The notes: generated by a model not told the origin, from the sequence alone. A stretch of 64,000 nucleotides of DNA from Pecten maximus (GCF_902652985.1 NC_047019.1:17050001-17114000); one strand, 5' to 3'; shown: positions 9,801 through 64,000, counted from the stretch's first letter. Translations and numbers: made by a program.

Positions 9801-11393
9801 ATGTAATACATGATACTGATTGGCAGATCTTAGACTGGGAAAGTATTTGTAATATAACCTATAATTACATACATGGCACTGTTTTGACATAAAGGTCAGA
9901 GATACAGGCCCTCTAGGCCTCTTTTACAATTTAAATTCACTGTAACAATGCAGTTTATTTACTTTTAACATACAGAAGAAACAAAAATGTACAAGTAGAG
10001 GGCCATTTCAAAATGGTACCAATTTATCATTTATTGTATATAAAACTTGGATCTATTATTGTTTTAAGTGGCTACAGTCTTCATGCTCGGAGCAAGTCAT
10101 TCCAACAGACCGTGGTGGCCTTCCTCACCAGGTTAGGGGCACTTGACAGTGATGCAGTCATTGTACAGGTATACTATCCCTGGCCAGTACTTTTCAAGTT
10201 TAATGTTGATATAACTCATTTCCCAATTGCTGTGAAAAAAATTGTTTCCCACTTACAATTTGGTACTGTCAGGCAGATCCCTCATGTTGAAATCTTTGTA
10301 ATATTATTTGATAATGAGAACAAAAAGTTAATTATGTCATTTTATGATATTGATGCTGAAGTAGCTTGGTGAGCAGAGCAGGACATCTGAGCCTCTTCAA
10401 GTCTGGTTTATGTCTTCTGGCTGCTATGTTGATATTTATTGTTTTTATTTTACAGTACTTGGCCGAGATGATAAAACACCAGCATATTGAGAACCACTAC
10501 TACACCACCAGTAATACAGGTAGAGACTACCATCTCCTATAGCTCCTCCATCACTCTCTTCCTTGCCTTTTGTCAATGCCTTACATTAAGCCTGTCTATT
10601 CGTTCCACCAGATGTTTACATAAGTCCCCTACCAGTGAAAGCGATGAGACTATTGGTTTCCTCTCCATCCGTCTTGTATGTGTGTATGTAACGCAAAAGT
10701 TTATCAGCTCTCTAGTGGCTTCATTTCTTGAGTAATTTTGATCAAACTTCACACAATGATAAAGGGCCATTATAAACATCTCAGACAAGATTGAGTTTCA
10801 GGGTTTTTGGGTCAAGGTCAGAGTTACTTTTTTTAGCAGGGCATTAAAGGGGAAATGTATCGCTTTAGCAATACCTAGAGAATGCTTGTTATCTGTTGGT
10901 CTGTCCAGGCTTTGATAATGCATGTGTTTACCAGTTGGCAGATGTTTTAGGTTACATGTACTGCATGGGGTTAGCGTTGTCACTAGATTTGTTTTATGTT
11001 ACGCGTTGTCACTAGATTTGTTTTATGTTACATGTACTGGAGTTAGCGTTGTCACCAAATTTGTTTTATGTTACATGTACTGGGGTTACCGTTGTCACCA
11101 GATTTATTTTATGTTACATGTACTGGGGTTAGCGTTGTCACCAAATTTGTTTTATGTTACATGTACTGGGGTTACCGTTGTCACCAGATTTGTTTTATGT
11201 TACATGTACTGGGGTTACCGTTGTCACCAGATTTATTTTATGTTACATGTACTGGGGTTACCGTTGTCACCAGATTTGTTTTATGTTACATGTACTGGGG
11301 TTAGCGTTGTCACCTAATTTGTTTGATATTACAGGAGTGCCAGTCAGACCTCTGCTCCTACGTACCCAAAACTGTCAGACATTCAAATGCTGA
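864..11393 (+). CDS. SMCR8: SMCR8 (DENN-domain subunit of the C9orf72-SMCR8-WDR41 complex), 5'-partial, 11 exons in window
   Basis: GT-AG exons with consistent phases: 864-1474, 1889-1943, 2313-2371, 3198-3360, 4187-4331, 5242-5298, 6317-6396, 8687-8764, 10069-10168, 10456-10519, 11335-11393 (TGA). Translated blocks HVIYSLLSGRPVIV, MKLVGVCR, RFVTILDVDRRVLLSPAYQG, LLSEISSKAFIFFH and DAVIVQYLAEMIK are collinear with the vertebrate SMCR8 C-terminus as I recall it (AIYSLLSGRTLVV, WKLIGLQR, RYTSILDLDNKTLRCPLYRG, LTQLCSKAFLY, DVRVVQYLAELLK). The first three exons are low-complexity linker and less certain. Confidence 0.88.
3636..3927 (+). mobile_element. tRNA-headed SINE (degenerate) in SMCR8 intron
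   Basis: Head GGGGCACAATAGCTCAGTTGGTTAGAGCA (A box), degenerate B box GGTTTGATGC, central GTCCTTGGGCAAAACACTT motif common in metazoan SINEs, AAAC-type tail. Confidence 0.65.
5500..6050. repeat. ~16-bp tandem repeat (CATATACATATTCAAT)n
   Basis: Directly visible tandem array; explains spurious ORFs 5631-6092 and 5647-5979. Confidence 0.9.
6470..8170. repeat. 23-bp minisatellite (GTACCTGTACGTGTATGGTTACT)n with 29-bp variant units
   Basis: ~1.7 kb array visible directly; source of the many overlapping C/Y/V-rich ORFs. Confidence 0.95.
9110..9335 (+). mobile_element. 3' fragment of a SINE-like element
   Basis: CTTCAGTGAGGTAGCACTATAAAGT core and ...GCTGTTGATAGGACGTTAAACAATACAAAC tail resembling mollusc SINE 3' ends. 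Confidence 0.45.
10950..11334. repeat. 43-bp minisatellite abutting the last SMCR8 exon
   Basis: Unit GTTACATGTACTGGGGTTA(C/G)CGTTGTCACCAGATTT(G/A)TTTTAT, about 8-9 copies; period 43 (e.g. 11070 to 11113). Confidence 0.92.
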
Positions 11394-13704
11394 ATTTACA
11401 GAATCTTCTTACTCAGTCATCACGGTTAAAGAGAAGTCTTCAGATGGAGACAACACCATATATAAGGTTGTCCTTCAGATCTGTGGTTTCACAAATCAGT
11501 TATTGTTAGCTCGCTTTTTCGAAGAAGAGGGACCAGAAAGCTAGCTAATGGTGTCATCCCAGCGTTGGCGTTGGTTTTCTATTAACATTTTGCCAAATAT
11601 CAATATGCCGTTCAACACTTGCACCAAAATGTGTATACCAAATAATTTGGTTGAAATTAGGCATTAATGCATCACTCTATAATTGAACTAGGGTACTGAT
11701 ATTTGACATAGGGTTCCCTTGGGGTTAAAATATTCACTACCAGAGTCAAACTAAGGAATTTTGGGGGAAAAACCCTGCTTTGACATGTTTTGGAAATCAT
11801 ATTTGCATTTTTGAAGACATCAATACCAATTCATATAATTATTTGAATTATTTATTGACAAATATTTTTGCGAGAAGAGCAATGCTGTTCTACAACAGTT
11901 CTTGTTATTACTTAAAGTTACCATTAGGCCATTACTCAAAAAACATTCTGTTTCTTTTAAAAGTACATTTGTAAATAATGTATTAAGATATCTGCTACTT
12001 GCAATTACATGAAGTGTATACTTTTGAATTATATAACTGACAAATTTCATAAAATGATTTTTTTTTGGCACAGTATTTTGTTGTAAAATAGATCAATGTA
12101 ATTTAAAAACTAGACACATGTAAAGTGAATTTTAAATGAAAATTGTTGTTTATTGTGTTATACATCTAAAATAATGACTGAAATATACTCCATGTTAAAT
12201 GTGTTACTCATAATGATGATTCTTCTTTTGCTACAACTTGTTTTGTAATCTGGCAAATTTTGATGAAACAAAAGATTTTTGAATCCAATATTTATAATTA
12301 TATTAATTATATAATTATTGGCAAGATTAAAACTGAAATTTTTAAATCCAATATTTATGTATATTAATTATATAATATAATAATTATTAGCAAAATTAAA
12401 ACTTCTGAAGCTGAAGATTTTAAAATCCAATCCTTTAATGACAGTGCTATTTATGTTCTTTCTAGTTGGGATTTAAAAATAGTCCCTCAATTAGTGAATG
12501 GGATTTGAGAAAACATATAAAAGTATAACCCAAACAGGAGAATATCAAATGTAATGATATATGATACGGGTGTTCTGAATTAGTGTTCCGCAAGTGAAAT
12601 GTGTCTCACAGAGATGGGAGAAAATACTTCTACCTGTAAATACTCACAGGCCTGGATTGTCTTATGTGTTAGTAGCAATGTTCAGAAAAACTTACTTAAA
12701 GTGTTGTTGAATATCAAAATTATGTTGTTAATCATAAGGAATGGGTGGTGCAATAGGGATATATAGTTTACACAGTGCCAAATCATTGTTTCTTTGATTG
12801 TAGTTATAATTAAGGTGTATCTATCACACATTAAAAAGTGATGTTCCGATTGTCTTGTAATTATTGTGAGGATTGTGTGTGTAACATTCCATGAAATTTG
12901 TATGGAGGTATTCATCTTTCCACGAGTACAAATCCTTGACAAATTTCAGTATTTTATTGATTTATTACCAGATAATCATGTATATTGTATCAATATGAAA
13001 GAAAATGTTGAATGTTTTATTTCAGTTAAATGTTATTAGGTTCGGTTGATTTAGTTTATAAACACGTGTACGCTACTGCTAGTAATCAAATAGTTTGGAA
13101 AACAATTTAAGCTAATTTATGATTTGACAGGTAAATGAGAAGTCCTCAAATTAAGGATTTAAAAAAGGGTTATATTTTTAAAGATTTTTACACCGTATTA
13201 TTTTTCATAATAGTCTGAATTTTAATTTTTGAAAAAAATATGACAATTGTCTGAACAATTAAAAACAAATTTGTTTGAATCCTTTCTAAAAATATTTTTA
13301 TTTTGACTGGTATACATTAATGAATTAATTAAAAGTACAATGTATTCCTGCAATCAGGTTAATATGCAGTGAGATAGATTATCCCTTTCCATACACCTGT
13401 ACTTTTTTATATATATATATATACAAATATAGTAAGGAGTACTTACTTGTCATATGACGATTTCTGTACTTACATCATTTTTGAATGATGGACCATGTTT
13501 GTTATTTTTTCTGTGGATCAATCATTCGATATCCTAGAAATAATTTATATAATACAGCAGGAATTTTGTTGTTTAATTTGGTTGTTTTCGAAAATTTGAA
13601 TCTTTCATTTTTGGAGTGCCCACCAGGATATGTGTATTCACTTTAATTTCACAGACAGACATTTCTTCTAGATGTAACATTGTTTGCTTCCAGTCAGGAA
13701 ATAA

Positions 13705-49015: not shown

Positions 49016-50418
49016 TGTAGCTACACTAGAACGAATATTCATACCCTGCCTACACTGCTCTCCGACCCTCCGTCAGAAATTGTCCGTCAGTCGTCCAGAG
49101 CTACGTTATCGCAGCTATATACAGCTGATATAGCTACACTACAGTTAGCTACATACACTTTTATTATGTGGTATAGACGAATTCTCGTCGTCTGCGACTT
49201 TTGTCAAGTAGCTTAGGCTAATCGGACGGTTTGTGGCAAGTGATTCTGTAGTGGTTTTGGCTCTTACTAGGTGTATGTACCCTTAGTCGCGATGTTAGCC
49301 GTACTCTGGGGGGTTCAGCCTAGGGTTTTCGGAGGGATATCGTGTCTAGTTTGACATGTGTCTGATTCGGGTTATTGTTGCGGCCATCTTTGGAGATGGG
49401 CCGTGATCAGCATGTATCAAGTGCTGTTATTGGTCGAGGCACCGGCGGTGGAGCCAGTCGTTGGGTCTCATAATTAGGTTCACTGGGGTCACGGGTATAA
49501 AAGTCGAGCACGTGTGTGAAATGTGCCTTTCTGCCGGAGAATTGGTGAGTTGCAGTCGGTTTCTGCATCATTTCTGACGCTTTGAAAACAGAGCAACTCA
49601 ACACAATGAAGCTAGTTTAGACCCTTATGCTTTGAAAACAGAGCAGACTAATGTTTGTTGTTAGGCTCTTTTAGAACATGACACGCTCGGAAAACTGAGC
49701 GAGCTCTCGGCATGTTTACATTATTTACGTAGGTTTACTTCAGCTACGCTCTGAAAACAGAGTGGTGGGTTGGACTTTAGAACACGTCAGCTTTGGGCTG
49801 GAGTTAATTAAGGAGTCAGTGATGTAATATTAGGATATTAGTACTGTTTGCCTCCACAGTTATGTAGGTTTTGTAATGTTTGACATGTAGTCTTTCCACA
49901 GGGAATGGGGTTGGAAGTAAGGCCCGTCTCGTAGGCTCAGCTATGTATTCTTAGTATTAGTTAGGAGTAATAGACAGTTTTGTCAAGTCACAAGTTCTAG
50001 AGACAATGGTTGGTGTGTAATCTTAACTAGGGTATTGAGGGAAGCACCTGCACGGTGACTGTTCCAGCCTCTATGTTAACATAGGTCATATTTGAGTCGG
50101 TCCCATTTTTCCTAAGTTTATTTATTGTTTATTTTGTTGGTATTTCATTTAGTTAACTATTTTTCTATTGCCTTTACACCTAAGTTTTATTATGTTGAAC
50201 TTTATTTTTGGTTATCTACAACTTTTTGTTACTTGTTGATTTATATACAGGCTGCCTCCATGAAACATAATTAAACTTGTAAAACTTATACTGGTGTTGT
50301 TGTGGATCTTTCCTAACACTTCCGACTAATCCGGAGAAAGAACCGGAAGGTGAGACCGGGAGTTGACTGTTAGCCACGGTTAAAGTTCTATTTTGTAAAG
50401 TTTCGGCCTTGTACAACA
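49016..50418 (+). mobile_element. Probable solo LTR (Gypsy-like)
   Basis: TGTAG...ACAACA ends, 4-bp TSD GTAC (49012-15, 50419-22), TATAAAA at ~49496, ATTAAA at ~50270, higher GC, no ORF. Confidence 0.65.
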
Positions 50419-51039
50419 GTACATTCTAAAAAATAACACAACGCGAAGTCTTTTGTGTGGCAAACTCTCGTCTCCTGACCCCGCCTACTACAATTACTTT
50501 AAAGTTTATCAGTACTGTAATGCAGTAAGCTTTACGACAATTTAGTCTACTTTAATATGCTTTTCAGCTACATCAGTATCTAGAAGAAATATGACACGCA
50601 TCTTTATTAAAACCCAATTACTTACCTTGAACACAATATTACACCAGTCTAGACTCTAGCAGATCGCAAGTTCCGCCGTTCCGTCAAACCGTGACCTTGA
50701 CCTTTTCCTGATCGATCAAAGGTAAATAGCACCGTACAGTTACCGGAAATACTTTATCGATTAGATAGGCCTGATACAGTATATTAGACTTGCGCCAGTC
50801 ACCATCCGCCAACAATTAATTCATAAACAAAATTCAACTCAAATATTTAGTCGCTTGATACTAAAACATTGGATAACGTACCGATTTCATTTTGCACATA
50901 AAAACATATCTTCAGATAATAGCATTTATCTTCTACAGGCGCTTGCATAGAAAATGTGAATTAAAAAAAAATGATATGGCAGTGGTAATGTGTACTGTGG
51001 AAACCACAAGTTTGGCAACTCCGTCACGATCACTGTAGT

Positions 51040-54000
51040 CACCGTATGGGAGCGACACCGGATATTGGTACTAGCTGAAGCGGAGAGAGTGTGACAGCAG
51101 GCCTAACCGGAGGTAAGATTTCGGAAAATTACTATATTTATATAGATCCAACAGAACTAAGGTTTGACAAGTTAATTCATGAGGATTTCCGTGGTCAGCT
51201 CAAGCAAAAATTATAACGACTTGGTGCCACGTATTTTACATTGATCGTAAAACATGCCATCTAGTACCGGCGAAACATTAGGTCTGTCAACTTCACAATC
51301 AGTTTAAACCTTTATTTCTAGCTAGATCCATGCTTATGGTGTTGTTTCTTTTCCATGATTATCTCCACTAACGTTGAGTATACATTATTCTTGATGTTAA
51401 TTAAAAATAGCGTCAAAATCGTTATTTTAAGTTTTTCGAAACTGAACGGCGGCTTGACAGCATTGTGTACGGCTGCTTGATGATTCTATATATCTCAGGT
51501 GCACGGCGTCTTGGTATTTAACATTTTGTATTCCATATTTTTAAAACAATTCAAACATTACGTTGTAGACAAATATAATATATATAGATTGTATTAAGAT
51601 GAACGTTAAGGCAGTGACGAGAAACGAGTCCGTTTAGAACCCCTACAATGGTAACCGGGATCGGTAATATCATATGGTTCTCTAAGCCAGAGTACAATGA
51701 ATCCAACTTCTCGTTTGTCTTTTCGTTTTTGGACCCACATCATCTACTCACCAACTGCAGAGTAAAAGTATGCAAGGATGGATTTCCTCAGAGAGACATC
51801 AGCCGAAATGCCTGGATGGATGTTGCAAGAGGAAACAAAACCAACTTGAAAATTTCACATGTTGAAGATCTGGTCGACAAATAGAGCGATTCTATTGCAA
51901 TGGAAACATTTTCTCTCGACGTGGAAGAGGCTATGGTTGAACTTAATTATACAAAGGAAGCTGCATTTTGTCGACTTGTTAGGGAGTTCCACGAAGCAGA
52001 TGACACGCCAGGCATATCTGCTTTAGAAAGGTGTCAAAGAAGACTAAAATCCGTGAATGGCTTCTTGAGGGTGTGAATTTCGGAAATCTCCCTGCATATG
52101 GATCTCACATTAGAGGAGTACCGAACGTTATGTTTCAGGGCTACATCACCAACGTAGATAGAAGGATTCAACTTTACCTGTATGTTAAATCTGGAAAATA
52201 TAATGTAAAATCGCTTGGAAGTTTAGAAGCAGAGAATATTTTTGGCGAATTTCAAGATCTGGATCCAAAAGGATCAGGAGTGATTAAGACTGAGGACATT
52301 CCAAACGCTATAGAAGCTGCCTGTCAGATGAACCTTTCGAAGGCTAAAGTCTAACCGGTTAATGAGCTCCTGATGGATATGGACGAAGATCATATCGGAT
52401 CCTATATTTGTCCCGTTTCCACAGACCATGTTTTGGTCAGGTCAGTATTTATGTAGGTAATAAGTATTTAGTGTTTCATTCTTCCAAATAATGGGCGACT
52501 ACAAAAACAGCTTACTATTTAAACGATGATTACATATTCCAGGTACAATCCATCTTTCCATACTTATTTAAATGTATCACTTGAGTATGCTATAGTTGAA
52601 ACTTAGTCTAACACCCGACAAGGGATTAAATTAAGACGATTGTTTGCTTAGCATTACCATATTAAAGGCGTCTTTCGTAAGTGTAACCCAGTAATATGCA
52701 ATATGTAAACCTAGGTAAAAAGCGCACGGAAAATTATTAAAATTTCATATTTTAGTCTCTGTGACCTTTATACCTATGACCTTGAAACTTTCAACACTTA
52801 TGCATAATGCGAAGGAGATTTACTCACGTAAGTTTCATACTCGTATCATTATTCTGTCCTTAGTTATATCATTTTATAAAATTTTGGATTTTAGAGTCTG
52901 TGACCTTGACCTTTCGTCCAATGACCATCAAAACCTATAGTTCAAGAATTTTACATTTTGACCTCTGTGACCTTGACCTTTGAACCTATGACCTTGAACA
53001 AGTTTCATGCAAATCTTTACATTCTTATCTATCATTGGTGTAAGTTTGAAGTCTGTAAGTGTTATAGTTTTTGAGATTTGCTCGTTACAAAATCCGTGGA
53101 AGAAAAAGAATAGGAAGAATAAGAACAAACATTACAAAACTAAGATGTCTTTCCGCTGTCGCGGGAAAGCCCTAATTATGTATGTAATTCTTTTACAGGG
53201 ATCATATGTTTGACAACGTCATGAGGTCGAAGAGGAAAGCCAAAAGGAAACTGGTGACCATTTCCGCTCCAGACTCGGCAGCGAGGGGTGTGGCACCTGT
53301 ACGTCAGCACCACAAATGTGACGAAAGTAAAATATTGCCCCATAAACGTCTAGGAATAGAACTGGACTTACGCATTATATAAACCAAGATCAGTGCTGTA
53401 TTGTAAATCGAACGAATTTATTCATTATGGCTTCATTTTGTGTTTTAACCTCCACCTCCACGTCAACAGAAACACCAAAAGAAATAGAGGATAAATCCAT
53501 GTTCTGACAAAAAAGTACAATTACCTCTATATTAGGTATATTATAATGTGCGCACATGTACAAATAAAGTTACTTTATTTTAGGCATAGCATTGGGTAGG
53601 TGTCCTTAATGTTAGAAAAAATAATTCAAGTGATAATTTAATCGCTACTGATCTATTGTCTCATCAGATTCAACATTATTTAACACAACCTTCTTTCAAT
53701 GTCATTCAATGTGCCGTACACTGAAGCACCAATTTGCCGTACACATAATTTCAACACATCTTCAAGCCGCCGTACAGTTTCGAAAAACTTAAAATAACGA
53801 TTTTGACACTATTTTGAATTAACATCAAGAATAATGTATACTCAACGTTAGTGGAGATAATCATGGAAAAGAAACAACACCATAAGCATGGATCTAGCTA
53901 GAAATGAAGGTTTAAACTGATTGTGAAGTTGACAGACCTAATGTTTCGCCGGTACTAGATGGCATGTTTTACGATCAATATAAAATACGTGGCACCAAGT

Positions 54001-54179
54001 CGTTATAATTTTTGCTTGAGCTGACCACGGAAATCCTCATGAATTAACTTGTCAAACCTGAGTTCTGTTGGATCTATATAAATATAGTAATTTTCCGAAA
54101 TCTTACCTCCGGTTAGGCCTGCTGTCACACTCTCTCCGCTTCAGCTAGTACCAATATCCGGTGTCGCTCCCATACGGTG
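51040..54179 (+). mobile_element. DNA transposon A: 418-bp TIRs, CACCG termini, 5-bp TSD, internally deleted
   Basis: TIRs 51040-51457 and 53762-54179 (about 6 mismatches by eye); TSD GTAGT at 51035-39 and 54180-84. Confidence 0.92.
51620..53382 (+). pseudogene. C-terminal remnant of a P-element-related (DxxH) DDE transposase
   Basis: FLDPHHLLTNCR, DK*S..AMETFS..V, SLGSLEAENIFG resemble P-family D..HL.K..R, DKM...A..FS and ENFFG motifs; in-frame stop at 51882, frameshift ~52050; terminal exon 53199-53382 (DHMFD..RGVAPVRQHHKCDESKILP). Confidence 0.65.
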
Positions 54180-56240
54180 GTAGTGCAACTAGTACGGCAA
54201 CGATGTTTGGACTCGTTTCCGGTATCGCTTCGGCGACATAACAACTTCGACACGGCGATAAACACAAGTCAATATCTGCTTTTACAGGTATTATAGGGAT
54301 GGAGGGTTAGTTATGAATGATAAAGCATATATTAAGGTTTCACCAAGCCTTCAAAGAGATATCGCTTTTTATCCGAGATTTCAGTAAATAGATTTGAATG
54401 TCACGCATTAACAGATAATACCACTTTCAGCTTCATTTGGCTTCGATTTGTCGATTTGTTTTAGGACAATCTTCTACAGTGATTCAATTTGTCAAATGTT
54501 CAGATTTTGCCCTTTCTTTTGATATATAATTTGATTATGATAGTCTGTTAAAGATAAAAATAATCCCAAATTTGTGTTCGATATCAAACTTCTATTGCAA
54601 CGGTTTGGAACTTGGTAGTGTGTAACGTACGCATTATCGCATTGAAACTAATCCAAACCGTTGCGTCGAGATTGACACCACGATGTAAACAATTAGTCAT
54701 ACTAGGTCGTTTCTGGATCAAATGTAACAATCTATGTATCCATTTATGGGCATTAACCCAGGGCATCGTTTTTCACTCATGTTCTGTGGATTTTTTTGCA
54801 AAATTAAACAGGATAAAGGCAAAAGTTTGGAAATGTCGGAAGGAATTCGCATCTCCTTGAAAGTAAATAGCAATATTTTATGTTTTATATGAACAATCTT
54901 CATGGAAACACCGTACTTATATAAAGCTTAATACTTCATAAAACCGCGAGTTGAGTATAGGGTTGTGACAACATGCGCATGGTGTTAAAATAGCACTAGT
55001 TTGAACCTACCCTTTTGCTTCTACTGCATCGAGGCGTATACCGGAAACGGGTCCAAACATCGTTGCCGTACTAGTTGCACTACAGTGACGATCGAGCGGA
55101 ACGGCACCCCATCTCACTTCAATCGACTAAAAAACACATTTGTTCAAACTGACACAATGCATACTATATGCGACCGTCATCAGGAAACCGCGATTCATCT
55201 TTAACCTATATACCGTGTCACTCAATACGAATTTTTACATCCAAAACAAATAATCCGTGAAAATATCGCCGAATTCCTCCAACAAAACACCATTTTTCAA
55301 ACTGCTTCCTCAGCCTGTACAGATTTCTCATTTGCATACGGGGTTGAAAGGTCATGCGATTATATACATGTAATCGACTGTCACCAGGTGCACTTTTTGT
55401 GGTCATCTCGGCAAATATTGTACAGGTGCATGTACAGGATGTCGTTTATGAGATCACGGACTAAGATAGTATATTTGTTTTTATGCCAGTGATGAGATCG
55501 TCCTTTCCATTTCTTCAACTGCATCATTTCGGTAGTTGTTGAAACTTCGTTTTAAAATCGAAAGATTGCATTTAACGGTGCTCAATAACTTGTTCAAGAC
55601 AGGGCCTGGACATTATACGTATACCATGAACTTGCAGAATCGGTTGAAATTTTTCGAAGTTGTTAAAATTTGGACGGGGTAATAGCTGATAGTTGTTCAA
55701 TATTTTGTCTTCAAATTGGACTTTCAATCTATTTAGGGTTATGTCTATCTGCAGTTAAATAAATGGACCAATACATGACTATATATAGACCACACACAAT
55801 ACCTGTAAGTATAAGAGGTTTAATATTTAATACATACCGACTTTTTGAAAAGAATCATGAATGTTAAAAAGAGTACACCTATTTTGTTGTTATACTCTGA
55901 GCTTGGTCGTTTACCTCTGCAAATTACCAGGAAATGCCGAATAGTTAAATACTGGTTGAAGTTAACTAAGACTTAACTAATAATTGTATATTAACGTCCG
56001 TGTACGACGATACGATTATATGTAATCACAGAAACTGTAACTGGCAATGCCAGGTTAAAAACTTACTGATGTCTACTGGCTTTGGTGATGTTTGGTTAAA
56101 TCAAAGCGTTATTACGAAAAAGTATTTTAGCATCTTTTCAAACAACGCCTAACCGATGTTTTTATTCAATCAAGGAATGAATTTACTGAAAATTCATCAA
56201 AATGTTATCTGTATAAATTCTTGTTAAACTCTTTTACTCT

Positions 56241-59200
56241 CATCATCATCATCATCATCATACTTTATTTCCTCCGGTTGGAGATTTTAAATACAAGGAA
56301 ATCGACATAAAAAAAGTAAATGAACAGAGGAATTAGAAGAAAACGCGAAAAAAAATATGTATATACATCGAGATGCAAGCGCGGCATTGAAAGGGATTTT
56401 CATGTCCGCGCGAAACAGTTACGTTGGTTTAAGTCAAGACATTACGACAGACATCGCGTAACACGAGCGACAAATCGAACAGATTTCATGAGGAATTGTT
56501 CATAGTCTGTATCGTCAATGAATGGAATTCCTGTATTGGCTCCTAATATGGCGCGGGTGAAGGCAGTAGCATCCATTTTCTCAATGAAAAGGAATACAGT
56601 TGGACCGAAGGTAATGAGAATATCTTCCATAAAGCTTTGTTTTAGAGCAATATTGGCTATACAATCAGCACACAGATGAATTACTGCGACGTCATGAGAC
56701 ATTGTGCAGAGTGGGCATTGTTCATCGGCAAGGCGACTAGGCAGAGCCAACACAGAACATATATAATAAATGTTTTGCATATCGGACGGAGATTCCGCAG
56801 CATGCCACAAGCTATATAGGTCATATGAGCAATGAATATTTTGGAAAAAGGAGAAGTCATTATCATTTGCCATACGTTCCTTGAGAGCCGAGTTTTCGTA
56901 GTTGTAGGACCTAATAGTGGATTTCACTATGCGTTTCCATTGGGACTTGGTTGGAAATATGTAAGACCGTAGATATGTCTCCAAATAATAAAGAAGATTG
57001 TATTTCCGGAGTACTTTAACTATATCAGGGAAATATCCTTTATGGTTAGCTGGTTTGTTGGGTAACACTGAAATATATAAATGTAGACGTATGGTAAAAA
57101 TTTGCTTCGGCAGATAGGATTGGTCCATAGCTATCATTTTTTGTAGAAACAGTAGTTTCCTCCGGTCGACTTCTGCTGAGATTCTGAAAAGACCAAGTAT
57201 AGGTTCGGCTATATCTGACCTTGTACGACGTGGTAAACCCAGTATGAGTTTTACAGCGTAGTGTTGAAAGCAAGCAATCTTGGAGATTTCTGTTACAGTG
57301 AGATTAGTCCAATGTTCACACCCATACAGAATCGACGGTAAAACGACTTTCTTGTAGAGACTGGTTTTAACGACAGGACTTATTGCAGATAAGGAGGGAG
57401 CTACACCAACAATAGAATGTAAGGTTCTTCTACCTTTATCACAAGCGTTGGTGATACGTTCGGCGTTAGACAGTTTGGACGAAAACACTGTACCCAGGTG
57501 AGTTTGGGAGTGTGGGATATCAAGGGTATGATGGCCTAGTGTCCATGTTTCATTCGGATTCCTTGGAATGTGGTTTCCGATTACTAAAACTTTGCACTTT
57601 GTATCACTGAACTCGAACTTCCACTTCATGCTATATTCCTGACAAATGTTCAACAGGTGTTGTAGCGAACGCGGAGATGTGCTGATGAGGGTGATGTCAT
57701 CTGCCAGAGTTGGATTCCCAGAAGGGACCCTATCGATAACGGCGCCATGTTTGCTTTTACTTAGATAGTCAAGTAGGTTATCAATAAACGTTTGATAAAG
57801 AAAAGTAGATAAAACACCACCTTGTCGGACTCCAGATTCAACGGGAAACCAATGTGACGTCATACCCTGCCACGTCACGGCGCTCGACATACCCTTGTAC
57901 GCCTCGCGAATGGTGTTAAGCAGATGGCCTGTGATGCCGACATTAGTGAGTTTACGAAAAAGGCCTGTGTGCCAGACGGTATCGAAAGCCTTTTTTATAT
58001 CCAGGAATGCAACAAACACTTTGCTTCCTAACTCTATGTTATGAAAAATTGTTTCTCGGAGAGAAAATGTGGCAGTTGTACAACTGAGAGACTTGCGGAA
58101 ACCGTTCTGTTGGTCGTTTGGGAATGATAAAAGTGAAGTCTTTAGACTGTCATGAATTCTGTTGTTGATCACTGATTCAAAAAGTTTGTATATACAGCAT
58201 AAGAGAGTAATTGGCCTGTAGCTTGCGGGATCACCGCGAGATTTGTTACCGCCTTTGAATATGAGAAGAATTATACCTCGTTTCCATACATTGGGCACGT
58301 GCTCAAGCTCCAGACATTTGGCGAAGAGTTTTTGAAGACACAATATCAGAGTCCGTCCTCCATATCGTAAATACTCGTTTTGAATAAGATCTACTCCGGG
58401 TGCTTTGTTGAATTTCAAACCTCGGATAGCGCACTCAACTTCGTCGAAGTTTATATTTCTGTTTAGATCATCGTGATCGAAAATGTCCTTAGGGTCATCA
58501 AGTTCGGCGTCGAACATTTCTGCCCTCCTAGAATTAACCTTATAAACAGACTGGAAGTAATTACCAAAAGCTTGCGCAATATCGACGGGAGAGCGTAAGG
58601 TTTCGTTACCGACCTTAAATGGTGAAACTTTGAGACGTGAAGGACGTTTTAGAAGCTTCAGTGCTCTCCAAAATGTCTTGCTGTCAACAACTGCAGCATC
58701 ATTCAGATCTTGGTGAAGACTTCGTAGGTGTTCGTTATAGGCTGCGCATTGAGTATTCTTGAATATACGTTTCGCTAGTTTATATTCCCGGTAAGAGGGA
58801 TGATCGGGTCCACGTGGTTTACCTTCAGACATCCACTCTCTTCGTCGCGCACGAGCAGTCTTGTGGGCAGATTTCACGTTGATGTTCCAATAAGGCTTCA
58901 ACTGTGGGTTGTATCTTGACATAGGGATACACGAATATGCACAAGCGATCAATGCGTCGGTAATAAGCGTGTGGAACCTGTCAATATTCGGTGGTTCGTT
59001 GATTTCGAAATCTTGAAAAGACCGTAGGGTGCTGTCAACAGCGAGCTGATACCGGATCAACTGATCTGTAGAACATTTACTCCAAAGAGGGTGTGAGGTA
59101 GGGGTTGGAAGTGCAGATCGTTGGATCAAAGGAGATTTGATAACACATTCCAGAACTGCATGATCAGAGGCGATATCGGCATCGGCAGAGGAAAAGACTC

Positions 59201-60219
59201 TGCATGATTGAATACAGTCGAGCATCGTGTCTGTAACAAGAATATAATCAATGGTAGTTTCAAGAGGTAGATACGTATAGGGAAGGCCACTACACAAACC
59301 CGATTTGTTAATCGGTATAAGGTTGTTGGATGAGATGAATTTGCGAAGTAGGCTTTGCTTACGACGCGCCGAGTAAGAAACAGGTAAGGTGTCATATTGT
59401 GCGTTGAAGTCGCCAATCACAGTCACATCTCCAAGCTCAGAGTAAAACGGACGACATCACTAAGAGTTTCGACCGCTTCGACATATTGGTTAACGTTCGA
59501 GTCGCTGGGCATATAAACACCAAACAATAAAGAGGCGTGGAATTACCTCGATGTATATTTAATCCAAAGATGTGATTAGACCGGTTGATACCAATTCCCT
59601 CCACGGTGTAACAAAGATTTTTGTTTACTAAAAATATCAGGCCACCGGACCCACAACAGATAGTTTCATAGTTCGCGTCCGTGGAACTCGGATATGTGTC
59701 AAAATGTTCGTGGATACTATTTGGAAAATCAGCACATTGCTGCGAGAGGCGTAGTTCACAGAGGAAAGCTATGTCGTATGAGTTCGCTGACAGTATGTTG
59801 TTTATACAAAAGGATGATGAGATGATCCCTCTGACATTCCAAGTGAGAATAGATAGTGACATGATAATCCAAAGACTTACCGAACACGAGTAAATGTTAA
59901 TAATATTGCTGGTCATAGCTTTCTTTAAAAGAGTTCACTGGATTCGACGATACTTTGTCACGCCATAACTTGTTACGGATCCATCTCCTACATTTGATCT
60001 CCCTTGGCCAAAAGTCATTGCTTTCAAGCACACACGCTTGATCCTTCGGTACGGAAACTTTTGCAGAAAGCAAGCCGTTTCGCGAGTTGAAAATGTTAAT
60101 TCGCGATACCGAGACACCAGCTGATGTAAGGTATTTTTTAATACCTGTTTCAGTGGAAGATTCGCCGATGTTACCAATGTAAAACTGGACAGATTTGGCT
60201 CTACGGGCTCCCACAAAAA
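56241..60219 (-). mobile_element. 5'-truncated LINE (RTE-X-like) with (ATG)n tail, ORF1 3' end plus ORF2
   Basis: (CAT)7 at 56241-61; ORF1 remnant 59897-60214 (FYIGNI..SAKVSV..FWP..IKCRRW); flanked by 298-bp direct repeats. Confidence 0.88.
56442..59862 (-). CDS. LINE ORF2: APE endonuclease + reverse transcriptase (frameshift near 59500)
   Basis: SILTWNVRG, GDFNA, TIDYI, SDH (APE); KAPGVD, YRPITL, FLDIKKAFD, GVRQGGVLS, LADD, HLG (RT); 994-aa open portion 56442-59426. Confidence 0.92.
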
Positions 60220-61362
60220 AGTTAAATACTGGTTGAAGTTAACTAAGACTTAACTAATAATTGTATATTAAAGTCCGTGTACGACGATACGATTATATGC
60301 AATCACAGAAACTGTAACTGGCAATGCCAGGTTAAAAACTTACTGATGTCTACTGGCTTTGGTGATGTTTGGTTAAATCAAAGCGTTATTACGAAAAAGT
60401 ATTTTAGCATCTTTTCAAACAACGCCTAACCGATGTTTTTATTCAATCAAGGAATGAATTTACTGAAAATTCATCAAAATGTTATCTGTATAAATTCTTG
60501 TTAAACTCTTTTACTCTACAGTATTATTTAACAAAATCAATTCCAGATATTTATCATCGGCTTATATCAAAGTTTCGTTTATCATCTCATCAGTTAAGTA
60601 TAGAAGGCAGACATCGTAATATCCCAAGGGCACATAGAATTTGGTAATTTGGAAAATCAGGTAGAAGATGAATTTCATTTTATTCATAATTGTCCTCTGT
60701 ATGCAACTTTACGTAAGAAATTGATCAAAAATGGCTATTGGAACCGTCCGTCGTCGTATAAACTTGTACAGTTACTAGCAGTACGTAATAGTAAGGAACT
60801 TTGTCATTTAGTTAAATATTACGATCAAGTTTATTATTACGTTCAACGTTTCAAGCTTAATATGTATTGTTTAATTACCATGTATTTTCTTCCGGTTACC
60901 TATTGCACATGACATTTTCTGGCACATTTTTTACTTCATATGTTATGCCTGTCGTCTTCCAATCTATCAAATTATGAATATGACTTCATACAATTATCCC
61001 ATATATATTTCACAGCTGTCCGCCATTTTATCAAAATCATTCTTGTCTTGGACAATGTAGGTTATTTTTCATATCATACTTAACATTTTGTATATAGGTT
61101 TTTGATATCCTTATTGTACATACACATGACATTATTCTGTTTTTGCTGTAATACCGATGGACCGCAAGGCCTAAAGTGAATAAACAAACAAACAAACAAT
61201 TTTCTAGGCCTTGTTGAAAATAGACTAATTTTGAAATCAGCAGTTTGCAACCGTCGGCTCATTATAGTTGCTAGAGAGCTTGTTTTCCGTTTTATCTTTA
61301 TTATTTGAACTCTGATCGTTTTAGTGTGCTAGTGCTATATTTTCTATGACATTTCATTAATC

Positions 61363-61705
61363 GTCTGACCGATCTGAAATTAGGAACAACAATGCATGAA
61401 ATGTCAAAGAAAATGTATCATTCAACAGATAAAACTTCACTAGAAAAAATAAAGTATCCTGGACCGTTTGGGTAAATTTTACCCACAGCTTACATAACAT
61501 GCTAATTTGTGTCTTTCCCATCACGATCACGTGAAAGTGCCCGTTTTCTGATATAAAATAAAATATTTTCTAAGCGTCTGACCGATATGAAATTAAGAAC
61601 AATAATGTATGAAATGTCAAAGAAAATGTATCATTAAACAGATAAAACTTCACTTCACTAGAAAAAATAGAGTATCCTGGACCGTTTGGGTAATTTTGAC
61701 CCACA
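61363..61705. repeat. Diverged direct repeat, period ~213 bp
   Basis: CGTCTGACCGAT.TGAAATTA...CCTGGACCGTTTGGGTAA.TTT.ACCCACA twice. Confidence 0.8.
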
Positions 61706-62229
61706 TCACGATACTAGTTTTTGTATTATCGACCTTGATTTGAAGAGAAATAGCTCTCATAACATCAATAAAATGACACAAAATATACACAGATTTGTTA
61801 AATTATACCAAACCAGAAATCAAACTTGTGACTTGCGTTTAATTTCGGTCTACTTCGCCACAAAATAGGCTTATTTCGAAACGGCGCTACCAAGCGATGC
61901 AGCCAGTATAGTGAAATATTGAAAAGTATCAAACTAATAAAACTTATAAATAAAAGTTGTTTTGCAGTGAAAATTTCTAAGTTTTACAGTAAAAATATAA
62001 GTTTTCCGTTTCAAGTTGACCAATCAGAGCAAACCTTGTTCCACCTACGGTTGCCACTTGTTGATTTTTCCGGTTGAAGCGGAGATAGATAAATTTGTTA
62101 TTTTGCTTTATTTCTGAAATATTCTGTCTTGTTTTTGACAAAATACTCACTTGACGTTAGCTGTTTATGCAGAGATTCTCCGAAAAAAACAGAAAACGCT
62201 TAAATTGCGCTGATCAGTCCTCTCAAAAT

Positions 62230-64000
62230 CACTGTGTGCGAACTCAACTGTACGGTTACCGGATGTTGCGATAGCTGAAGCGATTGAAAATGGCTGCTGA
62301 TTGCAGAGGTAAGAAGAAAATAACAATTATGTACCGATAAAGAGGGAATTGATACAAAGAATACGTTTTGGTACATGTATAGATATCAATCTCGCCCTGA
62401 GACTATGAACATGTCTTTTAACTATAACCAAACTATTGCAAGGATTAAAAATCACTTGCTCCTCATCGAAAATTTCATCTGAAAGATGTTATTATTTTCA
62501 TTTATATCGTCTCGTTATGTGTTATGTCTTCTATTTTAGTTCTGATACGAAAGTTTGAACCCCGATTATTATATATCACCATTCCTACACGATGTAATAT
62601 TATGCAAACTTACATTTTACGGGAAAAATTACACGGAGTTGAATACGGGAATATGTTCGGTTGTTATGAAAGTACTGTAAGGGTTGTAACCATCACAATT
62701 ACCCGTACGTTTTTTTTCATAAATCGCTACAACCCTTACAGTTTTAAAATTAAAAAATGTTATTAAATTACAAAAATATCGTGGACATTGAGAGTGTGGC
62801 CCAGACTACTTATATTATACATTATAAGTAGTCTGGGTCACACTCTCAATGTCCACGATATTTTTGTAGTTTATTCGATATTAAAAAATGTTTCTAATGA
62901 GATTTCTTGTTTACCGTTTCAGATCACGATGGAGTACCGTTGCTTTTATTGTGATTTCAAATGTTGCTGTTTGAAGACGTAATTGAGCACAGTCAAACTT
63001 AACATGGACATGAAATACTTAAATTCAAAATTGCAAAACACTCCCCAAAAGGAACTATAGTTCAGACCAAAAATTTCCAAATTGTACCAGATGTAGTAGG
63101 AAGACAGGAGGAAAAGATGGAAGTAAATAGTGACACATGTACTATCACATTACAGGAAAGTGATGATGGCTTTGCTTCTCCGTGCAGCAAAGTTCATTGT
63201 AGACCTTCTACGTCATTTAAGAATGTCAAGCAGTTATCGTTTGTTGCTAACACCTCTGAAGATGAGGATGGAGATGATGAACATGATTTAAGCGCTTTCT
63301 TCCAAGAAATTTCTTTACTTGATTGTGACCGTTCCAAAGCTTTTCGACACAGACAGAAGATACTGACGAGCTATATATATATATATAAACAGATCACACA
63401 GATGCTCCCAGGCGTCAGTCAAACTTTAAAGGAAAACAACATGACAAATATGTATGTAAAATTTAACGACCTGCTAAACCGTAAAGCATTACCAATGAAA
63501 AACATCGCATTTCTTTTGTTTTCTGATGTTGTGGTTGGTACTCCCATGACAATACTCATGCTATGCGGTATTCCGCCGTGGTGAAACATATTTGGAGAAC
63601 AGGATTAAAGCTGTTAAAAGGGAAATTCCTGAGATTTATGGGAGGTTGGAAGAATCAGGGTTTAAATCAGAAGGGACAAACCAGTTCACAGGATGCGAAA
63701 ATAGATTTTGCTGTTCCAAATCATTTATGTTTAGAGGATATTAAGCTTTGACAAAAACTAAGAAATGTAAAGCCAGGAATATTGAACGAGATGATAGAAA
63801 TGGCAAAACGGGACGACGTGGAGCAGCACAATACATTCAAACTCTGTATCGACGGTAAACAAATAAGCACAGGTGCAATTGATCAGAAAGAAGGTGATGT
63901 AAATATATGGGGCTATGAAACAGAACCTACATTGTTACAACGGAAAGATGAACTACAGAGAGACAAAATGCTAATTGAAACATTTGCAAATTTATTGGAA
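62230..64000 (+). mobile_element. Left end of DNA transposon C (CACTGTG terminus) with disrupted transposase N-terminus, runs off window
   Basis: Starts CACTGTG; shares ACCGGAT.TTG...TAGCTGAAGCG...GAG|GTAAG with the TIR of element A; acceptor at 62922 then ATG 62929 MEYRCFYCDF (C2H2-like), MRYS...W..G.KL.KGKFLRFMGG, FAVP, FKLCIDGKQI (candidate first catalytic Asp); stops and frameshifts present. Confidence 0.65.

What the first reader, a model, noticed from the sequence alone, without database searches (positions are those of the whole stretch)
51031..64000. DNA transposon group with Transib/RAG-like ends (CAC termini, 5-bp TSD) but a P-element-like transposase
Seen: A (51040-54179) ends CACCG..CGGTG with TSD GTAGT. 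B (51031-55087) ends CACTGTAG..CTACAGTG with TSD ACGAT. C begins CACTGTG at 62230 and shares a TIR motif with A. A holds a C-terminal remnant (DPHHLLTNCR, DK*S...FS, EAENIFG) and C an N-terminal remnant (CxxC..H..H, LCIDGK). Known: CAC ends with 5-bp TSDs characterise Transib and RAG-like transposons, while P elements typically make 7-8-bp TSDs. Inference: A and C are the two halves of one family's transposase, combining P-like catalytic motifs with Transib-like ends. This may be a poorly described lineage; I cannot exclude that it is already catalogued.
Basis: partly seen in the sequence, partly recalled or inferred. Interest (0 to 1): 0.75.

Follow-up and report, generated by a model that had tools for sequence, protein, structure and literature searches.

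The report
P-like transposons with built-in exonuclease
Three decayed copies of a little-known group of jumping genes sit here; their enzyme is related to the fruit-fly P-element transposase but carries a DNA-chewing nuclease inside it and leaves 5-base footprints like the ancestors of the antibody-gene recombinase.

Summary
A (51040-54179; 418-nt TIRs) is nested in B (51031-55087), and C starts at 62230. All three begin CACYGT and have 5-bp TSDs. Across the genome, 12 of 13 paired copies that I could read show perfect 5-bp TSDs. C ends outside the window, at window coordinate 65465, with the predicted AAAAT.

A, B and C are internally deleted, non-autonomous members of three related families. 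They are not two halves of one family. C keeps profile positions 13-610 of a 1345-position family profile, and A keeps 1089-1330.

Full-length relatives are 1100-1600 aa, mostly molluscan, and labelled only as uncharacterised or YqaJ-domain proteins. They have:
- an N-terminal C2H2-like finger;
- invariant D...D...DxxH...E residues;
- an intact lambda-exonuclease (YqaJ) domain lying between the first and second Asp.

An AlphaFold model (pLDDT 84.8) matches Drosophila P transposase at Z 30.9. HzTransib scores 13.2, RAG1 11.7 and Hermes 9.5.

Kolobok features are absent. I found no paper describing this lineage, and Repbase and Dfam could not be checked. Earlier scan notes concern other YqaJ-bearing transposons, not this one.

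The parts
51026..51030 (.). TSD of B (ACGAT), left copy; the right copy is at 55088-55092
   Evidence: Read directly
51031..51039 (+). Left tip of B (CACTGTAGT); its last 5 nt (GTAGT) are the target duplicated by A
51040..54179 (+). Element A: 3,140-bp non-autonomous deletion derivative, TIRs 51040-51457 and 53762-54179, TSD GTAGT (51035-39 and 54180-84)
   Evidence: 418 nt, 99%; 3 other full-length copies at 97-99% identity plus longer variants; 5 of 6 copies with a perfect 5-bp TSD
51618..52351 (+). A's coding remnant: the C-terminal 18% of the transposase (profile 1089-1330 of 1345). It includes the DxxH signature (DPHH, 51732-51743) and the putative catalytic Glu (52232-52234). It is broken by one in-frame TAG (51882-84) and one frameshift near 52004-52073
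   Evidence: hmmsearch with the family profile, E 2.8e-30, 3.4e-20 and 2.4e-42; ORFs
54185..55087 (+). Rest of B (MITE-like, no coding remnant); right TIR ends ...CTACAGTG at 55087
   Evidence: I3. B's two halves flank larger elements elsewhere whose interior matches the C-type N-terminal protein at 33-44% identity. One search found no profile hit in B
62225..62229 (.). TSD of C (AAAAT), left copy; the right copy lies outside the window at window coordinate 65466-65470 (L031:3466-3470)
62230..64000 (+). Element C: 3,236-bp deletion derivative running to window coordinate 65465. The TIR is about 54 nt (62230-62283). A putative first exon ATG..GAG|GT lies at 62290-62308 (inferred)
   Evidence: more than 40 left ends in the genome; matches 1-2883 and 11296-11480 of an 11.5-kb copy
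62929..64000 (+). C's coding remnant: the N-terminal part of the transposase (profile 13-610 when the part beyond the window is included). It holds a C2H2-like finger (from 62929, broken here), an HTH-like region and the first catalytic Asp in LCIDGK (Asp codon 63851-63853). The coiled coil and most of the YqaJ domain follow beyond 64000
   Evidence: E 5.7e-14 to 3.4e-35; intact versions in L003 and L033

Best explanation
A, B and C are non-autonomous, internally deleted members of three related families of one cut-and-paste DNA transposon lineage that is abundant in this mollusc-like animal genome.

Autonomous relatives carry one spliced gene for a 1100-1600-aa transposase built on the P-element/THAP9 type of RNase H (DDE) core. 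The parts are:
- an N-terminal C2H2-like finger in place of a THAP domain;
- a P-like helix-turn-helix region;
- the strand bearing the first catalytic Asp (..IDGK..);
- an inserted coiled coil plus a complete lambda-exonuclease/YqaJ nuclease domain;
- the rest of the RNase H domain with the second Asp (..DGQ..);
- a long acidic and helical insert;
- the DxxH signature, an insertion domain, and the catalytic Glu (..SLxxExFFG..).

Shown here: element anatomy, 5-bp TSDs, conserved residues and fold similarity.

Inferred: the enzyme binds the TIRs, probably through the subterminal motif shared by A and C. It cuts at the CACYGT tips and integrates with a 5-bp stagger. The built-in 5'-3' exonuclease resects transposon or donor ends, either to shape the 3' ends for strand transfer or to steer repair of the donor gap. 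A, B and C move only when a related full-length copy supplies the enzyme.
For: Anatomy and TSDs:
- TIRs and TSDs read; 12 of 13 paired copies have a perfect 5-bp TSD.

One protein:
- 9 of 9 non-A genomic hits of the C-terminal query have an N-terminal hit upstream on the same strand.
- The C3 copy carries the C-type end, the finger, IDGK, YqaJ and the C-terminal ORF.
- The A and C remnants match the family profile at E 1e-14 to 1e-42.

Family:
- 803 representative proteins at E<=1e-3.
- The named ones are molluscs plus Branchiostoma, all uncharacterised or 'YqaJ domain-containing'.

Conserved residues in 36 full-length members (P0153 numbering):
- D66, D595, D971, H974 and R980 in 36 of 36; E1141 in 35 of 36.
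- YqaJ residues D359, E375 and K377 in 36 of 36.

P-likeness:
- PF21787 (TNP-like_RNaseH_N) is the only transposase family that recurs: 14 of 36 members at E<=1, best 1.4e-5, always the second half of the profile.
- A genomic member on C14 reaches 25.3 bits against a cut-off of 24.6.
- The AlphaFold2 model of P0153 has pLDDT 84.8 and pTM 0.75.
- Foldseek's top hit is 6p5a_A, P transposase, at E 5.2e-5.
- VIA-align: 6p5a_A Z 30.9, rmsd 2.9 A, 325 residues, model range 25-1180. HzTransib scores 13.2, RAG1 11.7 and Hermes 9.5.
- The nearest named Atlas clusters are all P-transposase families: 0.90 for residues 600-1253 and 0.88 for residues 1-200 of P0019. These are leads only.

Nuclease:
- YqaJ is found in 26 of 36 members.
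- The family profile hits lambda exonuclease at E 1.7e-5.
- Structural Z is 14-16.
Against: - No Pfam family reaches its cut-off on the window's own fragments or on the 571-aa genomic ORF.
- PF21788 (GBD) and PF21789 (RNaseH_C) are not among the 25 families shown of 29, so the P-type insertion domain is supported by structure only.
- No structure is solved for Kolobok, MuDR or Dada, which share the C/DxxH signature. 'Closest solved fold' therefore cannot place the lineage inside P rather than beside it.
- I could not see a residue-level superposition, so equating D66/D595/E1141 with the P catalytic triad is an inference.
- TSD length, termini and the DNA-binding domain all differ from classical P elements.
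Confidence: 0.75

Rival explanations
1. The elements belong to the Kolobok superfamily, specifically KolobokE, the lineage that fuses a DDE transposase to a lambda-exonuclease-like nuclease.
For: - Kojima & Bao 2022 (PMC9587614; passages read) say KolobokE encodes a PD-(D/E)xK lambda-exonuclease-like nuclease, that Kolobok occurs in molluscs, and that it shares C/DxxH with P.
- KolobokP solo LTDRs are flanked by TSDs of 3-5 bp.
- An earlier scan note (s1-788501) reports a KolobokE-type element in this genome.
- No Kolobok structure exists, so a Kolobok core might also score best against P transposase.
Against: - TSDs are 5 bp and not TTAA: 0 of 12 perfect TSDs contain TTAA.
- Termini are 5'-CA..TG-3', not 5'-RR..YY-3'.
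- There is no zinc finger between DxxH and E. Only two Cys columns reach 60% there, and none follows the first Asp where KolobokE has CCHC.
- The nuclease lies between the first and second Asp, not downstream of the transposase domain.
- The KolobokE alignment is in a supplement I could not open.
Confidence: 0.1
2. The elements are Transib/RAG-like transposons, as their ends suggest, with a very divergent RAG1-core-type transposase.
For: - 5-bp TSDs and CAC tips.
- C's CACTGTG differs from the RSS heptamer (recalled as CACAGTG) at one position.
- HzTransib and RAG1 appear among the structural matches at Z 13.2 and 11.7.
Against: - P transposase scores Z 30.9 at rmsd 2.9 A, against rmsd 4.7-4.8 A for Transib and RAG1.
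- Foldseek gives E 0.24-0.39 for RAG1 against 5e-5 for P.
- The DxxH signature is invariant. [quoted passage not shown]
- No RAG1 or Transib family appears among the 25 Pfam families shown of 29.
Confidence: 0.03
3. A separate, unnamed superfamily-rank lineage in the hAT/P/MuDR/Kolobok/Dada group that only resembles P because P is the one solved structure of its neighbourhood.
For: - Sequence similarity to P is marginal: sub-threshold PF21787 in 14 of 36 members, and none for GBD or RNaseH_C among the families shown.
- The TSD, the termini, the DNA-binding finger and two large inserts all differ from P.
Against: - Z 30.9 over 325 residues spans chain residues 193-569 of P transposase. From recalled domain boundaries, that range includes its insertion domain.
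- Hermes (hAT), also a C/DxxH family, scores only 9.5.
- Atlas feature hits are exclusively P families.
Confidence: 0.1

Closest known systems
P element / THAP9 superfamily transposases (Drosophila P transposase, PDB 6p5a and 6pe2)
   Same: - RNase H-type DDE core with the same fold (Z 30.9, rmsd 2.9 A, 325 residues).
- DxxH signature between the second Asp and the Glu.
- Partial PF21787 matches.
- TIR-bounded cut-and-paste elements with a spliced gene.
   Different: - 5-bp TSD instead of 8 bp (P value recalled).
- CACYGT tips instead of CATGATG (recalled).
- A C2H2-like N-terminal finger in 9 of 36 gene models and no THAP-type C2CH pattern in 0 of 36.
- About 440 aa of coiled coil plus lambda-exonuclease inserted between the first and second Asp.
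- A further insert of about 370 aa between the second Asp and DxxH.
- GTP use is unknown.
Transib transposons and RAG-like transposons
   Same: 5-bp TSDs and CAC... termini; C's tip is one base from the RSS heptamer (recalled).
   Different: The transposase fold is far closer to P (Z 30.9 against 13.2 and 11.7). A DxxH signature is present. There is no RAG2-like partner and no RAG1/Transib sequence match.
KolobokE (Kojima & Bao 2022, PMC9587614)
   Same: A DDE transposase with the C/DxxH signature and a lambda-exonuclease-like PD-(D/E)xK nuclease in one protein; present in molluscs.
   Different: [quoted passage not shown] None of these is found here.
ISL2EU (PHIS superfamily; PMC4482050)
   Same: It pairs a DDE transposase with a YqaJ exonuclease (passages read).
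   Different: There the YqaJ protein is a separate second ORF, the transposase is Harbinger-like with a THAP domain, and the TIRs start GG. Here the nuclease is embedded in a P-like transposase.
hAT5-type hAT elements (recalled from Repbase usage, not from a call)
   Same: 5-bp TSDs within a superfamily that normally makes 8-bp TSDs, which shows that TSD length can shift within a superfamily.
   Different: Hermes hAT transposase matches only at Z 9.5. No hAT dimerisation domain appears among the 25 Pfam families shown of 29.

Membership tests
P element / THAP9 superfamily | RNase H-like catalytic core with the fold of P transposase | tested here: met
   VIA-align: 6p5a_A Z 30.9, rmsd 2.9 A, 325 of 442 residues, model range 25-1180. 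It is also Foldseek's top hit at E 5.2e-5. Model pLDDT is 84.8.
P element / THAP9 superfamily | Sequence match to Pfam TNP-like_RNaseH_N (PF21787) | tested here: inconclusive
   14 of 36 full-length members match at E<=1 (best 1.4e-5), covering only about profile positions 64-134. One genomic member reaches 25.3 bits against a cut-off of 24.6. One database member carries a precomputed PF21787. There were 0 hits on the window's own fragments.
P element / THAP9 superfamily | GTP-binding insertion domain and RNaseH_C (PF21788, PF21789) | tested here: inconclusive
   Neither is among the 25 families listed of 29. The structural alignment spans P chain residues 193-569, which by recalled domain boundaries includes the GBD. 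GTP binding cannot be tested here.
P element / THAP9 superfamily | C/DxxH signature between the second Asp and the Glu | tested here: met
   D971 and H974 are present in 36 of 36 members. A's remnant has DPHH. [quoted passage not shown]
P element / THAP9 superfamily | N-terminal THAP (C2CH) DNA-binding domain | tested here: not met
   0 of 36 members have a C2CH pattern before the first Asp. 9 of 36 start with a C2H2-like CxxC-x(10-14)-H-x(3-5)-H finger. No THAP family appears among the 25 families shown of 29.
P element / THAP9 superfamily | 7-8-bp target site duplication (recalled) | tested here: not met
   12 of 13 paired copies have 5-bp TSDs.
Transib / RAG-like | 5-bp TSD and CAC termini | tested here: met
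Transib / RAG-like | RAG1-core-type transposase | tested here: not met
   HzTransib scores Z 13.2 and RAG1 Z 11.7 at rmsd 4.7-4.8 A, against 30.9 for P. Foldseek E is 0.24-0.39. No sequence match appears in PDB or Pfam.
Kolobok (KolobokE) | TTAA 4-bp TSD and 5'-RR..YY-3' termini | tested here: not met
   The TSDs are GTAGT, GCTAC, ACCAT, ACAAA, ATAGT, TACAT, TATAA, TTATT, TTAGT, GTCTA, AAAAT and ACGAT. Termini are CAC..GTG. The defining features come from PMC9587614.
Kolobok (KolobokE) | Zinc finger between C/DxxH and the Glu, and a CCHC finger after the first Asp | tested here: not met
   Only two Cys columns (31 of 36 each) plus H974 reach 60% between D971 and E1141. None does in positions 60-110 after D66.
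Kolobok (KolobokE) | [quoted passage not shown] | tested here: not met
   The nuclease is present but lies between D66 and D595, at residues about 244-452.
hAT | hAT-type core and C-terminal dimerisation domain | tested here: not met
   Hermes scores Z 9.5 at rmsd 7.1 A. No hAT family is among the 25 Pfam families shown of 29.

The most novel reading that the evidence does not exclude
This is an undescribed lineage of P-related transposons, possibly of subfamily-to-superfamily rank, widespread in molluscs and present in amphioxus. A complete lambda-type 5'-3' exonuclease has been spliced into the RNase H fold itself, between the first and second catalytic Asp. The lineage uses RAG/Transib-style end geometry: heptamer-like CACTGTG tips and a 5-bp stagger. 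If so, the tip sequence and stagger regarded as the hallmark of the RAG/Transib line can arise on a different DDE scaffold. It would also be a natural single-chain enzyme coupling transposition with end resection.
Probability: 0.45. Interest if true: 0.72.

Novelty: new variant of a known kind. Interest (0 to 1): 0.6.

Why it matters
TSD length and terminal sequence are routinely used to assign DNA transposons to superfamilies. By those criteria these elements would be filed as Transib, yet their enzyme is P-like. That is a concrete warning for automated annotation of mollusc genomes.

The lineage is large: 803 representative proteins matched, and public records label them only as uncharacterised or 'YqaJ domain' proteins.

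A transposase with an intact exonuclease built into its catalytic domain is an unusual architecture. It could show how transposons manage end processing or donor-gap repair. It would also be a compact candidate for genome-engineering tools if shown to be active.

Tried and rejected
- Pfam on 8 window and locus fragments, and on the 571-aa and 269-aa genomic ORFs, gave no family beyond weak noise: EF-hand_7 at E 0.18 and DUF5758 at 0.23.
- phmmer of the 571-aa ORF against PDB sequences gave only noise. The family profile against PDB found lambda exonucleases but no transposase.
- blastn and tblastx of A against an 11.5-kb C copy found nothing. That copy lacks the C-terminal coding part, so this says little.
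- I looked for C-type or A-type ends near the C-terminal ORFs in loci L067-L074 and found none. As a result I read no full-length element with both ends.
- A PF09588 scan of the genome was capped at 150 hits and did not resolve whether the split PF21787 locus on C4 holds a YqaJ domain.
- Literature searches found no description of a P-like transposase with an embedded exonuclease or a 5-bp TSD:
  - (YqaJ with transposase/TSD, and YqaJ with transposon/bivalve);
  - (Kolobok with YqaJ, and KolobokE/KolobokP);
  - (lambda exonuclease with DNA transposons and Transib);
  - (P superfamily with exonuclease and mollusks);
  - (P element, THAP9, TSDs, Kolobok, Transib).
- PMC5443660 and PMC5753468 (passages) gave no TSD lengths. 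The P-element values quoted (8-bp TSD, CATGATG tips, domain boundaries, catalytic triad) are recalled.
- Bivalve TE surveys mention YqaJ genes only as a gene family (PMC10225492, one passage) or list no such lineage (PMC10294476, passages). Their supplements, and the KolobokE alignment in the supplements of PMC9587614, were not seen.
- Repbase and Dfam were not available.
- I did not use the look-up of sequencing runs or read laying, because the question did not need reads.

Full report
**What is in the window**

The region is AT-rich animal DNA; G000 is 918 Mb in 3,983 contigs, and the window is C5:17050001-17114000.

- **Element A (51040-54179)** has 418-nt terminal inverted repeats that are 99% complementary. 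It is flanked by GTAGT on both sides.
- **Element B** is interrupted by A, which lies inside B's left TIR. With A and one GTAGT removed, B is a 912-bp MITE-like element (51031-51039 plus 54185-55087). Its TIRs of about 50 nt begin CACTGTAGTGC, and it is flanked by ACGAT.
- **Element C** begins CACTGTGTGCG at 62230, after AAAAT.
- All three start CACYGT. A and C also share a subterminal motif, ACCGGATRTTG..TAGCTGAAGCG, about 20-50 nt from the tip. B shares its first dozen bases with C.

**Where C ends**

I fetched the DNA downstream of the window.

- The window's C copy matches an 11.5-kb, TIR-bounded copy (C5:39938545-39950052) at positions 1-2883 and 11296-11480 only.
- Its right end is at L031:3465, which is window coordinate 65465. 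The TIR there carries an internal deletion and is followed by AAAAT.

**Target site duplications**

| Family | Paired copies with a perfect 5-bp TSD | TSDs |
|---|---|---|
| A | 5 of 6 | GTAGT, GCTAC, ACCAT, ACAAA, ATAGT |
| C | 6 of 6 | TACAT, TATAA, TTATT, TTAGT, GTCTA, AAAAT |
| B | 1 of 1 | ACGAT |

- The sixth A copy, on C10, matches at only 3 of 5 positions.
- The total is 12 of 13. None contains TTAA, and there is no obvious consensus.

**One protein, three families**

- A family profile built from 36 full-length database proteins has 1345 positions. It matches A's broken frames at positions 1089-1330 (E 3e-30, 3e-20, 2e-42). It matches C's broken frames at positions 13-610 (E 6e-14 to 3e-35). 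It has no match in B.
- Searching the genome with C's N-terminal ORF gave 122 matches. A's C-terminal ORF gave 14.
- Of those 14, five belong to A copies. The other nine each have an N-terminal hit 2-5.5 kb upstream on the same strand. The contigs are C3, C366, C19, C6 (twice), C3835, C2450, C17 and C14.
- The C3 copy has a C-type left end (94.6% over 500 nt). It continues with a 428-aa ORF holding the zinc finger and LCIDGK, then a YqaJ fragment. Further on it has a 269-aa C-terminal ORF that is 56% identical to A's remnant.
- B's two halves flank larger elements on C10, C2 and C8. The interiors of those elements match the C-type N-terminal protein at 33-44% identity.
- A, B and C are thus deletion derivatives of three related families, not halves of one family.
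- A's other three 3.1-kb copies are 97-99% identical to it, which suggests recent mobilisation in trans.

**The protein family**

- The longest genomic C-terminal frame (606 aa, L068) found 803 representative proteins at E<=1e-3, and 180 at E<=1e-30. Many are 1100-1600 aa long.
- The named relatives come from Mercenaria, Solemya, Mytilus, Pinctada, Ruditapes, Batillaria, Littorina, Dreissena, Mya and Branchiostoma. All are called uncharacterised or 'YqaJ viral recombinase domain-containing'.
- In 36 full-length members, Pfam finds YqaJ in 26 and TNP-like_RNaseH_N (PF21787, the P-transposase RNase H domain) in 14. The best E-value for PF21787 is 1.4e-5, and the matches always cover only the second half of that profile. 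No other family recurs beyond three members.
- Invariant residues, in P0153 numbering:
  - D66, in ..DGKK..;
  - D595, in ..DGQ..;
  - D971, H974 and R980, forming DxxH..R;
  - E1141 (35 of 36), in ..SLxxExFFG..;
  - D359, E375 and K377, the nuclease triad.
- The nuclease domain therefore lies between the first and second conserved Asp.
- Nine of the 36 gene models start with a C2H2-like CxxC-x(10-14)-H-x(3-5)-H finger, the same as in C. None has a THAP-type C2CH pattern.

**Fold**

An AlphaFold2 model of P0153, made with 59 aligned sequences, has mean pLDDT 84.8 and pTM 0.75.

| PDB match | Foldseek E | VIA-align Z | rmsd | Aligned residues |
|---|---|---|---|---|
| Drosophila P transposase, 6p5a_A | 5.2e-5 | 30.9 | 2.9 A | 325 |
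| Drosophila P transposase, 6pe2_A | 2.0e-4 | 30.5 | 2.9 A | 330 |
| Lambda-type exonucleases | ~1e-4 | 14-16 | 2.7-3.2 A | 177-189 |
| HzTransib | not listed | 13.2 | 4.8 A | 333 |
| RAG1 | 0.24-0.39 | 11.7 | 4.7 A | 329 |
| Hermes (hAT) | not listed | 9.5 | 7.1 A | 279 |

- The P-transposase alignment runs from model residue 25 to 1180 and covers chain residues 193-569.
- The alignment starts at residue 25 and Pfam matches only the second half of PF21787. Both fit an RNase H domain split by the coiled coil (helices 92-214) and the nuclease (about 244-452).
- I had no residue-level superposition, so equating D66, D595 and E1141 with the P catalytic triad is an inference.
- The protein Atlas gave only P-transposase families as nearest named clusters, for residues 600-1253 (0.90) and 1-200 (0.88) of P0019. 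These are leads only.
- In the genome itself there are at least 40 canonical, contiguous PF21787 copies. A member of this family on C14 reaches 25.3 bits (cut-off 24.6) over profile positions 64-134 only. That hit lies between the N- and C-terminal hits of the family on the same contig.

**Comparison with known systems**

- **P elements.** By fold, DxxH signature and partial Pfam matches, the enzyme is of the P/THAP9 kind. By TSD (5 bp, not 8), tips, DNA-binding finger and two large inserts, it departs from classical P elements. The P values are recalled, not taken from a call.
- **Transib and RAG.** By its ends it looks like Transib or RAG, but the protein evidence argues against that.
- **KolobokE.** An earlier scan note on another piece of this genome led me to KolobokE, which also fuses a lambda-exonuclease-like nuclease to its transposase (PMC9587614, passages). 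According to that paper, Kolobok makes TTAA duplications and has RR/YY termini. [quoted passage not shown] None of these is found here. The KolobokE alignment is in a supplement I could not open.
- **ISL2EU.** It carries YqaJ as a separate ORF next to a Harbinger-like transposase (PMC4482050, passages).
- Seven literature searches found no description of this architecture. Repbase and Dfam could not be consulted, so prior cataloguing remains possible.

**Mechanism**

- *Shown:* TIR-bounded elements with 5-bp duplications; a conserved DDE/DxxH core of P type; an intact nuclease triad; non-autonomous derivatives with near-identical copies.
- *Inferred:*
  - The transposase recognises the subterminal motif through its finger/HTH region.
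  - It cleaves at the CACYGT tips and integrates with a 5-bp stagger.
  - The embedded 5'-3' exonuclease resects 5' strands at transposon or donor ends. It would either prepare 3' ends for strand transfer or favour homology-directed refilling of the donor gap.
  - A, B and C depend on full-length relatives for movement.

**Verdict**

This is a new variant of a known kind: a P-related lineage with Transib-like ends and a built-in exonuclease. Interest is 0.6.

Noticed in passing
window 55940-60516: A non-LTR retrotransposon lies on the minus strand. Its 994-aa ORF (56442-59426) matches RVT_1 at E 2.5e-32. The insert, about 56240-60216, is flanked by 300-nt direct repeats (55940-56239 and 60217-60516) that are 99% identical. 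That is far longer than a usual TSD, so the LINE may sit between two copies of another repeat.
   Followed up: partly
window 50321-61947 and G000:C5:17119681-17132000: The block holding A, B and the LINE is repeated about 19.4 kb downstream at about 90% identity. Element C, by contrast, has a 99% identical twin at C5:17132283. This looks like an old tandem duplication with later homogenisation of C, or uneven divergence.
   Followed up: partly
window 62764-62873: A 110-nt palindromic insert (51-nt arms, 96% complementary) lies in C's putative first intron. Most other C copies lack query positions 460-587, so it looks like a small MITE that landed in this copy or in its immediate ancestor.
   Followed up: no
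proteins P0160, P0183, P0207: Public records label these members of the animal transposase family as proteins of bacterial MAGs (Sedimenticola, Candidatus Thiodiazotropha). They are probably host DNA binned with bivalve symbionts.
   Followed up: no
G000:C4:52633698-52635254 (minus strand): Here a P-like RNaseH_N match is split into profile positions 3-57 and 58-134, 1.1 kb apart. This could be an intron, or another lineage with an insert at about the same point of the fold as in the family studied here.
   Followed up: no
window 61358-61705: Two 99-135-nt direct repeat units, 87-94% identical and 213-218 nt apart, overlap short inverted repeats between the LINE block and C.
   Followed up: no
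Several distinct transposon types in this genome therefore carry this nuclease (earlier scan notes).
   Followed up: no
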